19,501 bases of DNA, from the NCBI RefSeq assembly GCF_006345805.1, contig NW_021824222.1, forward strand, positions 1 through 19,501, written 5' to 3'. The position numbers and the translations under genes are program-made. How positions within the stretch are numbered: position 1 is the first letter of the stretch; each line of letters opens with the position of its first letter. The notes beneath the pieces were generated by a model. It did not search any database. It was not told the origin of the DNA and was given only the letters and a program-made list of their open reading frames with translations. Positions 2,563 through 2,649 of the stretch are shown in pieces. The stretch is from Octopus sinensis. Lineage: Eukaryota.

Positions 2563-2588
2563 ATACTTTGATACTTTGATACTTTGAT
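2563..2588 (-). repeat. CR1 3' tail, (ATCAAAGT)x3
   Basis: Top strand ATACTTTG x3. Short tandem, often octamer, tails are typical of CR1-clade LINEs. Confidence 0.85.
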
Positions 2589-2649
2589 AGGTTTCGGCCA
2601 TTATTGGCCCCGGCCATGTCTAACTTAATAGCACCACCACTGGTGAAGT

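What the first reader, a model, noticed from the sequence alone, without database searches (positions are those of the whole stretch)
2563..2640. The abundant SINE's 3' tail is homologous to this CR1 LINE's 3' end, with compensatory stem changes
Seen: CR1 end (minus strand) is GGTGGTGCT-attaagttaga-CATGGCCG-g-GGCCA-ataa-TGGCC-GAAAC-ct-(ATCAAAGT)3. SINE end (15474-15533, also near 8245, 12397 and 720) is GG(T/C)GGTGCT-ccag-CATGGCCG-c-AGTCA-aa-TGACT-GAAAC-aagt-(AAAAGAGT)n. They share two motifs, a hairpin, GAAAC and an octamer tail. The stem differs by two compensatory pairs (G:C to A:T and C:G to T:A). Known: stringent LINEs of the CR1/L2 group recognise a 3' stem-loop that partner SINEs borrow. 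Inference: a CR1 family of this lineage mobilises this SINE, and driver and passenger both lie in this window. The spacer and tail differences suggest the actual partner is a sister subfamily. I cannot tell whether this pairing is already published.
Basis: partly seen in the sequence, partly recalled or inferred. Interest (0 to 1): 0.8.

Follow-up and report, generated by a model that had tools for sequence, protein, structure and literature searches.

The report
SINE tail copied from CR1-like LINE
The abundant short repeat (SINE) in this cephalopod-like window ends in the same two-hairpin, octamer-repeat 3' module as a group of CR1-like LINEs, so it very probably rides on their reverse transcriptase, though on a different LINE family from the dead copy sitting in the window; this is a well-known kind of parasite-on-parasite pairing.

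Summary
A decayed CR1-like LINE (minus strand) ends at 2642..2563 exactly as described. Seven SINE copies in the window, not four, end in a colinear, related sequence.

This is followed by a second hairpin (HP2), GAAAC and an octamer microsatellite.

A covariance model built only from 13 LINE 3' ends from elsewhere hit just eight places in the window's 39 kb (both strands). These were the seven SINE tails (E 8e-12 to 6e-9) and this LINE's end (E 2.4e-4). Both helices covary strongly.

The window's LINE is not the best match, at 67% identity. A different family of the same LINE group matches at 85-87%. It is found in the octopod Argonauta hians and in metagenome contigs. It shares the SINE's UCCA loop and differs by one compensatory pair in HP2.

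So the SINE tail is LINE-derived and the likely driver is that second family. Mobilisation itself is inferred. I could not test strict CR1-clade placement or show that the driver family exists in this genome.

This is a new member of a known kind, since CORE-SINE/CR1 pairs are already published for bivalves.

The parts
2563..2590 (-). LINE 3' terminus: ct spacer, (ATCAAAGT)x3 octamer microsatellite (2588..2565), then 'at'
   Evidence: TRF: period 8, 3.4 copies, 100% match. The Argonauta relative ends in (ATCTAAGT)n.
2591..2595 (-). GAAAC box between hairpin 2 and the microsatellite
   Evidence: GAAAC, GAAGC or uAAAC occupies this position in all 25 aligned tails.
2596..2609 (-). Hairpin 2 of the LINE 3' module: GGCCA-AUAA-UGGCC
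   Evidence: RNAfold minimum-free-energy structure. The outer HP2 pairs covary across LINE tails.
2611..2639 (-). Hairpin 1 of the LINE 3' module: UGGU.GUGCUA-UUAAGU-UAG.CAU.GCCG. Here the stem is lengthened by CUA/UAG relative to the SINE.
   Evidence: minimum-free-energy fold. (R1 alignment, 13-nt insertion in the loop). The same extended form is in Argonauta at L001:12238-12264.
2640..5650 (-). Decayed ORF2 of the CR1-like LINE. The endonuclease is around 5456-4992 and the reverse transcriptase around 4203-3163, followed by a C-terminal conserved region down to about 2700. Many frameshifts and stops. The 5' boundary was not determined; an ORF1-like region runs up to about 6650.
   Evidence: frames. 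(Pfam RVT_1 E 1.9e-10, Exo_endo_phos_2 E 2.4e-6). (best hit Argonauta hians P0001, 58% identity). (nucleotide homology to L001 from window 5496 to 2563).
15145..15536 (+). Full-length SINE copy. It has a tRNA-like head with A- and B-box-like motifs, CCTTGGGCAAGT (CORE-like), an internal (TA)n(TG)n stretch and a 3' module at 15474-15536 (HP1 15474-15493, HP2 15495-15508, GAAAC 15508-15512, (AAAAGAGT)n).
   Evidence: R1 48.5 bits, E 7.7e-12.
7887..8313 (+). Full-length SINE copy; tail module at 8238-8297
   Evidence: R1 42.2 bits.
12054..12458 (+). Full-length SINE copy; tail module at 12392-12451
   Evidence: R1 43.0 bits.
11128..11465 (-). SINE copy with internal deletions; tail module at 11135-11194
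   Evidence: R1 38.5 bits.
12607..12753 (-). 5'-truncated SINE copy; tail module at 12614-12673
   Evidence: R1 45.1 bits.
537..709 (-). 5'-truncated SINE copy; tail module at 539-598
   Evidence: R1 40.4 bits.
702..777 (+). 5'-truncated SINE copy (76 nt); tail module at 716-775
   Evidence: R1 47.0 bits.

Best explanation
Positions 2642..2563 (minus strand) are the short 3' UTR of a dead CR1-like LINE (CR1/L2 group). It is a structured RNA module made of four parts:
- a long hairpin HP1 with one internal mismatch;
- a short hairpin HP2;
- a GAAAC box;
- an octamer microsatellite.

A wide group of marine-invertebrate LINEs carries this module, and its stems covary between them. The window's abundant SINE has a tRNA-like head and a CORE-like body and ends in the same module, so its tail was copied from such a LINE.

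By analogy with experimentally studied 'stringent' LINEs, the LINE's reverse transcriptase would bind the hairpins of the SINE's Pol III transcript. It would then prime on the terminal repeats at a nicked target (target-primed reverse transcription).

The source, and the likely driver, is not the family in the window ('A-type': HP1 lengthened, tail ATCAAAGT). It is a second family of the same group ('B-type'), which has the SINE's UCCA loop and a CAGCC/GGCUG stem. One member (L004) has an AAAAGAAT tail unit, one base from the SINE's AAAAGAGT.

Shown here: homology, structure, covariation, and the better match of B-type tails. Inferred: binding by the reverse transcriptase, mobilisation, and presence of an active B-type element in this species.
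For: **Sequence.** The tails are colinear up to the very 3' end.

**Independent model.** R1, built from 13 LINE ends from elsewhere, hits only the seven SINE tails and this LINE end in the window. R2 was built only from nine distant metagenome LINE tails (those whose coding-region identity to the B-type queries was reported are about 46-51% identical). It still ranks the seven SINE tails as its top seven hits (E 0.0016-0.06).

**Structure.**
- RNAfold gives the same two-hairpin fold on its own for the SINE (-16.2 kcal/mol, z = -3.0), the window LINE, Argonauta A-type, Argonauta B-type, L004 and L006.
- Pairing is 86.5% (A2) and 88.8% (A5), against 16-51% when partners are slid.
- 9 of 12 pairs (A2) and 9 of 13 pairs (A5) show changes on both sides. 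0 of 500 shuffles reach the observed covariation score.

**Conservation.** The Argonauta hians relative (58% amino-acid identity) keeps GGTGGTGCT, the lengthened loop, CATGGCC, HP2, GAAAC and (ATCTAAGT)n. A mantis-shrimp relative carries the module too (E 1e-5).

**Better donor.** B-type ends lie directly after LINE ORF2 C-termini (L001:13817-14369, L001:13428-13680, L003, L004, L005). They are 78-87% identical to the SINE tail, four of the five at 85-87%, against 67% for the window LINE.

**Literature.** SINE/LINE tail sharing, stringent 3' recognition and the eel experiment are described in PMC3747384. The CR1 hairpin plus 8-bp microsatellite as the presumed recognition site of the reverse transcriptase is in PMC8665684. 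Bivalve CORE-SINE/CR1 tails with compensatory changes are in PMC4824008, with further bivalve SINE/LINE tail homologies in PMC11481361.
Against: - No B-type LINE was found in the window. None came from a source labelled Octopus.
- The organisms behind L003-L005 are unknown (ENA metagenome contigs).
- No LINE in hand has the SINE's exact stem (CAGUC/GACUG) or exact tail unit (AAAAGAGT).
- The window LINE's own match to R1 is modest (22.5 bits), and it is not significant with the distant model R2 (8.6 bits, E 1.7).
- R1 includes four B-type tails that are near-identical to the SINE tail, so the SINE's high R1 scores are partly plain sequence identity.
- Alignment A4 is fitted to the model.
- No experiment bears on mobilisation.
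Confidence: 0.8

Rival explanations
1. The LINE family present in the window (A-type, ATCAAAGT tail) is itself the SINE's driver. Its reverse transcriptase would tolerate the shorter HP1, a different HP2 stem and a different tail unit.
For: Same module architecture, same GGTGGTGCT/CATGGCCG arms and same GAAAC. It is the only LINE of this group seen in the same genome as the SINE.
Against: Identity is 67%, against 85-87% for B-type tails. The A-type has a 7-nt longer HP1 apex, conserved as such in Argonauta, which the SINE lacks. Its tail unit differs from the SINE's AAAAGAGT at 3 of 8 aligned positions in the best register, against 1 of 8 for L004.
Confidence: 0.1
2. The direction is the reverse, or the tail is recombinant: LINEs picked up the tail from the SINE, for example by template switching.
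For: Template switching between SINE and LINE RNAs is known in general (my own knowledge). Within octopods, the direction is not formally polarised by my data.
Against: The module sits directly behind ORF2 in many divergent LINE families from different organisms, including a crustacean. The SINE body was seen only in this window and not in 22 kb of Argonauta sequence. A LINE origin is therefore far more parsimonious.
Confidence: 0.05
3. The resemblance between the SINE tail and this particular LINE end is due to chance or convergence on GC-rich palindromes.
For: Plain local alignment puts the LINE end only just ahead of unrelated places (22 against 20 and 19). GGCC is a palindrome that forms stems trivially.
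Against: The match lies exactly at the LINE's last 80 nt. It has the same order of elements and the same distance to an octamer array. R1 gives E = 2.4e-4 with no other hit in 39 kb. Intermediates (B-type tails) link the two forms.
Confidence: 0.03
4. The SINE is moved by an unrelated, more abundant octopus LINE (for example RTE), and the CR1-like tail is a relic.
For: RTE and Dong-R4 LINEs are abundant in octopus genomes and include recently active insertions, and an RTE-class LINE is transcribed in the octopus brain (PMC8967140, PMC9115989, PMC13282606).
Against: All seven tails keep both hairpins nearly intact. The variable site in HP1 (U/C at the third position) keeps pairing (U.G or C-G). 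This argues that the module was needed during amplification. No RTE end was available to compare.
Confidence: 0.04

Closest known systems
Bivalve CORE-, V- and other SINEs sharing 3' tails with CR1-14_CGi, CR1-Zenon or CR1 LINEs (PMC4824008 section 11; PMC4758252; PMC11481361)
   Same: Mollusc SINEs with a tRNA-type head and a conserved central domain. The last 35-61 nt are 72-95% identical to a CR1-group LINE end. Stem-loops are conserved, with compensatory changes between SINE and LINE.
   Different: Those are bivalves; here the host is apparently an octopod. I could not compare sequences with CR1-14_CGi because figures are not held. The two-hairpin description and the best donor family are worked out here, not taken from those papers.
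Amniote CR1 3' end: inverted repeat (hairpin) plus 8-bp microsatellite (ATTCTRTG)n (PMC8665684, citing Suh 2015)
   Same: No poly(A). A hairpin lies directly upstream of an octamer microsatellite and is proposed to be the recognition site of the element's own reverse transcriptase.
   Different: The sequences are unrelated as far as I can tell. Here there are two hairpins and a GAAAC box, and the octamer unit differs between families (ATCAAAGT, AAAACATT, AAAAGAAT).
Eel UnaSINE1/UnaL2, the experimentally tested 'stringent' SINE/LINE pair (summarised in PMC3747384)
   Same: A CORE-SINE that shares the 3' stem-loop and terminal repeats with its LINE. This is the mechanism assumed here.
   Different: It belongs to the L2 clade, is a vertebrate element, has a single conserved stem-loop and was shown by assay. 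Nothing was assayed here.
Octopus SINEs OR1/OR2 (Ohshima & Okada 1994), listed as CORE-SINEs in PMC4758252 and PMC4824008
   Same: Octopus SINEs with a tRNA-type head and a CORE domain. The window's SINE has CCTTGGGCAAGT after a tRNA-like head.
   Different: I could not obtain the OR1/OR2 sequences, so identity with the window's SINE is a lead only. The 2013 table of SINE/LINE pairs lists no octopus pair (PMC3747384).

Membership tests
SINE/LINE pair with a shared 3' tail (stringent type) | Colinear sequence similarity of the SINE and LINE over the last tens of nucleotides, up to the 3' terminus | tested here: met
   67% identity to the window LINE and 85-87% to B-type LINE ends. R1 E-values are 8e-12 to 6e-9 (SINE tails) and 2.4e-4 (window LINE).
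SINE/LINE pair with a shared 3' tail (stringent type) | Both end in the same kind of short tandem repeat rather than poly(A) | tested here: met
   octamers in both. The units differ: AAAAGAGT (SINE), ATCAAAGT (window LINE), AAAAGAAT (L004), AAAACATT (Argonauta B-type).
SINE/LINE pair with a shared 3' tail (stringent type) | Conserved 3' stem-loop(s) maintained by compensatory changes | tested here: met
   (85-89% of cells paired, 9-10 pairs with changes on both sides, slid controls 16-51%). (same minimum-free-energy fold in six sequences).
SINE/LINE pair with a shared 3' tail (stringent type) | The partner LINE with the matching tail lives in the same genome and was active at the same time | tested here: inconclusive
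   Only the less similar A-type is in the window. There is no B-type fragment there. B-type was found in Argonauta hians and in unlabelled metagenome contigs. No octopus-labelled B-type protein was found.
SINE/LINE pair with a shared 3' tail (stringent type) | Trans-mobilisation of the SINE by the LINE's proteins | not testable with these tools
   Needs a retrotransposition assay.
CR1-clade LINE | ORF2 with an AP-type endonuclease and a reverse transcriptase | tested here: met
   Exo_endo_phos_2 (E 2.4e-6) and RVT_1 (E 1.9e-10). Both lie in decayed frames.
CR1-clade LINE | Reverse-transcriptase phylogeny places it in CR1 rather than CR1-Zenon, L2, Rex1 or others | not testable with these tools
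   No reference LINE library is at hand and the hits are unnamed. PMC11481361 shows that the CR1 versus CR1-Zenon distinction matters in molluscs. I therefore call it 'CR1-like (CR1/L2 group)'.
CR1-clade LINE | 3' end with a hairpin plus a microsatellite of about 8 bp and no poly(A) | tested here: met
   The feature is as described for CR1 in PMC8665684.
CORE-SINE (tRNA-Core) | tRNA-derived head with a Pol III A box and B box | tested here: inconclusive
   TGGCTGTGTGG (A-box-like) and GGTTCAGTCCC (B-box-like) lie 43 nt apart. However, ARAGORN and Rfam report no tRNA.
CORE-SINE (tRNA-Core) | CORE central domain | tested here: inconclusive
   CCTTGGGCAAGT follows the head. It contains the CCTTGGG string that PMC5786205 names as conserved. 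No CORE consensus was available for an alignment.

The most novel reading that the evidence does not exclude
The dominant SINE of octopus genomes owes its expansion to one specific, so far undescribed CR1-like LINE family ('B-type'). A two-hairpin 3' module (an HP1 whose loop is YCCA in most members and which has one internal mismatch, then HP2, then GAARC) is the ancient recognition element of the reverse transcriptase for a LINE lineage shared by cephalopods and crustaceans. This would give a covariation-defined RNA target that could be tested directly.
Probability: 0.45. Interest if true: 0.45.

Novelty: new member of a known kind. Interest (0 to 1): 0.33.

Why it matters
SINEs make up about 12% of the Octopus vulgaris genome (PMC13282606) and about 40% of the repeat content of octopus genomes (PMC8967140). 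I found no paper in the searchable library that names the LINE that moved them. The 2013 list of SINE/LINE pairs has no octopus entry (PMC3747384).

Pinning the tail to a defined CR1-like family would have three uses. It says which reverse transcriptase to look for when asking whether these SINEs are still mobile. It gives repeat annotators a reason to label the family tRNA-Core-CR1 rather than tRNA-Core. It also yields a compact, covariation-supported RNA element for binding and mobilisation tests.

It does not change any principle. The phenomenon has been textbook since 1996-2002 and is documented for bivalve CORE-SINEs.

Tried and rejected
- Rfam scan of the whole window: only low-complexity and palindrome false positives (miRNA families below threshold). 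Rfam and ARAGORN on the SINE head found no tRNA.
- Plain Smith-Waterman statistics: the LINE end ranks top but by too small a margin to stand alone. I replaced this with covariance-model searches.
- Exact-pattern scans for the tail: genome contigs gave three chance hits in bacterial metagenome-assembled genomes, and viral contigs gave none.
- P0124, a LINE fragment deposited as 'Escherichia coli', was not on record. L008 is a chimeric contig without a tail. L094 has no tail. L002, a Logan contig, has a different tail, (ACCCAAGGT)n.
- The third protein search (P0122) was meant to find an octopus-labelled B-type LINE. The nearest hit remained P0121 (63%). The only species-named hit listed was from a mantis shrimp.
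- I looked by eye at the flanks of the four full-length SINEs for target-site duplications. I saw none clearly of 6 nt or more and draw no conclusion from this.
I also rejected the 'spacer' reading of the ccag and attaagttaga segments.
- Literature searches found no statement of an octopus SINE/LINE partner. Albertin 2015 was not held under the PMC id I tried, and no SINEBase supplements are held as text.

Full report
**1. What is at 2563-2640**

Read on the minus strand, the window has a long, decayed non-LTR retrotransposon.
- Pfam finds an AP-type endonuclease (Exo_endo_phos_2, E 2.4e-6) in the frame at 5435-4989 and a reverse transcriptase (RVT_1, E 1.9e-10) at 3842-3546.
- The coding region has to be followed through all three frames, across many frameshifts and stops.
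- The best database relative of a stitched RT-to-C-terminus query is a hypothetical protein of the octopod Argonauta hians (P0001, 58% identity). All other hits are around 50% and unnamed.
- The element ends ...cagt GGTGGTGCT attaagttaga CATGGCCG g GGCCA ataa TGGCC GAAAC ct (ATCAAAGT)3 at. Its last base is at 2563, where an (AT)n tract begins.

**2. The SINE**

- BLAST of the copy at 15145-15536 against the window finds four full-length copies: 15145-15536(+), 7887-8313(+), 12054-12458(+) and 11128-11465(-).
- It also finds three 5'-truncated copies: 12607-12753(-), 537-709(-) and 702-777(+).
- There is one 5' part (1085-1255) and two scraps.
- Seven copies carry the tail GGYGGTGCT ccag CATGGCCG c AGTCAAATGACT GAAAC aagt (AAAAGAGT)n.
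- The consensus starts with a head of about 75 nt. It holds an A-box-like TGGCTGTGTGG and a B-box-like GGTTCAGTCCC 43 nt downstream.
- The head is followed by CCTTGGGCAAGT. This contains the CCTTGGG string that PMC5786205 gives as conserved in CORE domains.
- Next come a variable (TA)n(TG)n stretch and a body of about 190 nt.
- ARAGORN and Rfam do not call a tRNA, so 'tRNA-Core SINE' is likely but not proven here.
- Octopus SINEs are reported as mainly tRNA-Core and tRNA-Deu (PMC8967140).

**3. Is the resemblance more than chance?**

A generic local alignment puts the LINE end first among all non-SINE places in the window, but only just (22 against 20 and 19; background 10.6 +/- 2.4). I therefore looked for independent LINE ends.

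*The Argonauta locus L001 gave two.*
- The first is the end of the P0001 element. It reads GGTGGTGCT attaggttagc CATGGCC tg GGCC cggcgc GGCC GAAAC tt (ATCTAAGT)n. Every motif of the window LINE is conserved in a 58%-identical relative.
- The second, found by chance 1.5 kb away, is a 5'-truncated LINE of another family. It reads GGTGGTGCA ccag CATGGCCG c AGCC gactg GGCT GAAAC atttt (AAAACATT)3. It has the SINE's own 'ccag' and 'c'.
- A second copy of this second family lies at L001:13428-13680.

*A search with its 153-aa ORF2 C-terminus led to ENA metagenome contigs.*
- L003, L004 and L005 end the same way.
- L004 reads GGCGGTGCT ccag CATGGCCT c AGCC act GGCT GAAAC ggtt (AAAAGAAT)2.

*More distant relatives show the same plan with other letters.*
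- For the members whose coding-region identity was reported, it is about 46-51% amino-acid identity to the B-type queries.
- The plan is cGGTGTAC ccca GTACAaCG, then a variable hairpin, then GAAGC, then an A-rich microsatellite (L006, L009, L010).
- A related-loci scan of metagenome contigs added more (L019, L031, L042, L052, L055, L059, L084, L037).

**4. The structure**

Aligning 13 such LINE ends (A2) shows that 'motif 1' and 'motif 2' are the two arms of one hairpin.
- In the SINE, GG-U-g-GUGC pairs with GCAU-g-G-CC around a UCCA loop.
- In the distant LINEs, CG-g-UGUAC pairs with GUACA-a-CG around CCCA.
- The internal mismatch falls at nearly the same place in both forms, one pair apart in the alignment.
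In the window LINE and its Argonauta relative, the stem is lengthened by CUA/UAG with a UUAAGU loop.

The counts on A2 for nine HP1 pairs and the three outer HP2 pairs are as follows.
- 86.5% of cells are paired, against 20-50% when partners are slid by 1-3 columns.
- 9 of 12 pairs have changes on both sides.
- The covariation score is 0.543 against 0.258 +/- 0.033 in shuffles (0 of 500 reach it).

The subset of nine distant tails alone gives 88.8% paired and 9 of 13 pairs with changes on both sides.

RNAfold, run on single sequences, returns the same two hairpins for all six tested:

| Sequence | Energy (kcal/mol) | z-score |
|---|---|---|
| SINE | -16.2 | -3.0 |
| Window LINE | -18.9 | -1.85 |
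| Argonauta A-type | -21.8 | -0.54 |
| Argonauta B-type | -21.1 | -2.78 |
| L004 | -19.8 | -2.45 |
| L006 | -11.4 | -2.16 |

The SINE fold makes up 94% of its ensemble. HP2 of the SINE is CAGUC-AAAU-GACUG, and the last G is the G of GAAAC.

**5. The test**

Model R1 was built from A2. It contains no window sequence and no SINE.
- Run over the window with filters off, it reports the seven SINE tails (38.5-48.5 bits, E 7.7e-12 to 5.9e-9) and the LINE end 2574-2642(-) (22.5 bits, E 2.4e-4).
- Nothing else scores below E = 4.9.
- Four B-type tails in R1 are close to the SINE, so I built R2 from the nine distant tails only.
- With R2, the top seven hits are again the seven SINE tails (E 0.0016-0.06). 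The window LINE end, with its lengthened HP1, drops to E 1.7.

So the SINE tail is a member of this LINE 3'-module family on structure as well as sequence. The window LINE's membership rests on four things: R1, the motif-by-motif identity, the shared fold and the Argonauta conservation.

A relative in the mantis shrimp Oratosquilla oratoria carries the module at the end of its ORF (25.2 bits, E 1.1e-5). The module therefore predates cephalopods.

**6. Which LINE gave the tail?**

Identity was measured from the first G of HP1 to GAAAC:

| LINE 3' end | Identity to the SINE tail |
|---|---|
| Window LINE (A-type) | 32/48 = 67% |
| Argonauta A-type | 58% |
| Argonauta B-type | 85% (second copy 78%) |
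| L003 | 85% |
| L004 | 87% |
| L005 | 87% |

- In HP2, the SINE differs from B-type stems by one compensatory pair (C:G to U:A).
- L004's tail unit AAAAGAAT is one base from the SINE's AAAAGAGT.
- In Argonauta, A-type and B-type are 42% identical over 112 residues of the ORF2 C-terminal region. They are separate families of one group, not close subfamilies.
- tblastn finds no B-type remnant in the window.
- Neither protein search found a B-type protein labelled as Octopus.

The direction LINE to SINE is the parsimonious one. The module follows ORF2 directly in many divergent LINE families, while the SINE body was not seen even in 22 kb of Argonauta sequence.

**7. Mechanism (inferred)**

- For 'stringent' LINEs, the 3' UTR is needed for retrotransposition. 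SINEs that share it are thought to recruit the LINE's enzymes, and this was shown by experiment in the eel (PMC3747384).
- For CR1, the hairpin plus 8-bp microsatellite is the proposed recognition site of the reverse transcriptase (PMC8665684).
- By analogy, a B-type reverse transcriptase would bind HP1 and HP2 of the SINE's transcript and start cDNA synthesis in the octamer repeats.
- The near-perfect preservation of both stems in seven copies fits a requirement for the structure during amplification. So does the U/C polymorphism in HP1, which keeps pairing as U.G or C-G.
- The 5'-truncated SINE copies fit LINE-type reverse transcription.

**8. Comparison with what is known, and novelty**

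- The same kind of result is published for bivalves: a CORE or V SINE tail shared with a CR1-group LINE, with stem-loops and compensatory changes (PMC4824008, PMC4758252). PMC11481361 adds further bivalve SINE/LINE partnerships, with 35-61 bp of homology at 72-95% identity.
- That last paper also warns that some 'CR1' partners are really CR1-Zenon. I could not resolve this here for lack of a reference library.
- I found no statement of a partner LINE for octopus SINEs. The 2013 compilation lists none (PMC3747384). Repbase and Dfam entries could not be consulted.
- Verdict: a correct and neat observation, a new member of a known kind, and of moderate interest mainly because these SINEs are such a large part of octopus genomes.

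Noticed in passing
window 533-612 and 702-781: Two 5'-truncated SINE 3' parts lie head to head as an inverted repeat. It is 80 nt long, 96% complementary and has 89 nt between the arms. This is closer than typical copy-to-copy identity, so one event may have produced both, but that is unexplained. 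It also causes a spurious Rfam MIR5048 hit.
   Followed up: partly
window 14239-14761: A near-perfect palindrome of about 520 bp, made of nested inverted repeats and centred near 14520. It carries telomere-like (CCCTAA)n at 14389-14434 and the mirror TTAGGG copies. It looks like a foldback or MITE-like element and gives the top, sub-threshold Rfam 'MIR2646' hit.
   Followed up: partly
window 16695-17902: A composite satellite made of a 33-bp unit (16695-16876), a 340-bp unit x2.8 (16844-17784, 93% match) and a 62-bp unit x3.1 (17711-17902).
   Followed up: no
window 412-429: A short interstitial telomere-type repeat, (CCCTAA)3.
   Followed up: no
window 6155-6211(-) and 5980-6036(-): The LINE's 5' (ORF1-like) region holds two copies of a CX8CX5CX3H motif, ICRYS.R..C..SDC.FTHLPGTRRT, in different frames. 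There is no Pfam match. It may be a duplicated zinc knuckle of ORF1.
   Followed up: partly
window 2600-2929(-): One reading frame of the decayed LINE stays open through both 3' hairpins (...GGAIKLDMAGANN). Read by eye from the sequence, it continues into the octamer tail. In the Argonauta relative, the sequence shows a stop about 22 nt before HP1. The open frame here is therefore probably incidental.
   Followed up: partly
SINE copies, alignment A3 columns ~250-290 (e.g. window 8045-8105, 15313-15339): The SINE carries an internal (TA)n(TG)n microsatellite whose length differs between copies. One copy (1085-1255) ends in it.
   Followed up: no
L001 (Argonauta hians) 13817-14369(-), 13428-13680(-), ~6697-6750(+): Two 5'-truncated B-type LINE copies lie within 22 kb of Argonauta sequence. 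A third short stretch with the GGGCTGAAAC box and the (AAAACATT)n tail also lies there, though it did not reach the R1 threshold. One of the copies is next to the A-type element. The family is clearly multi-copy there.
   Followed up: partly
L095:1965-2024 (Oratosquilla oratoria, GCA_046742065.1): A LINE relative in a mantis shrimp (48% amino-acid identity to P0122) has the same two-hairpin module overlapping the end of its ORF (R1 25.2 bits, E 1.1e-5).
   Followed up: partly
P0124: A 94-aa fragment of this LINE group is deposited as a hypothetical protein of Escherichia coli, on a 563-bp contig. This is almost certainly animal-DNA contamination of a bacterial assembly. It is not on record for look-up.
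   Followed up: partly
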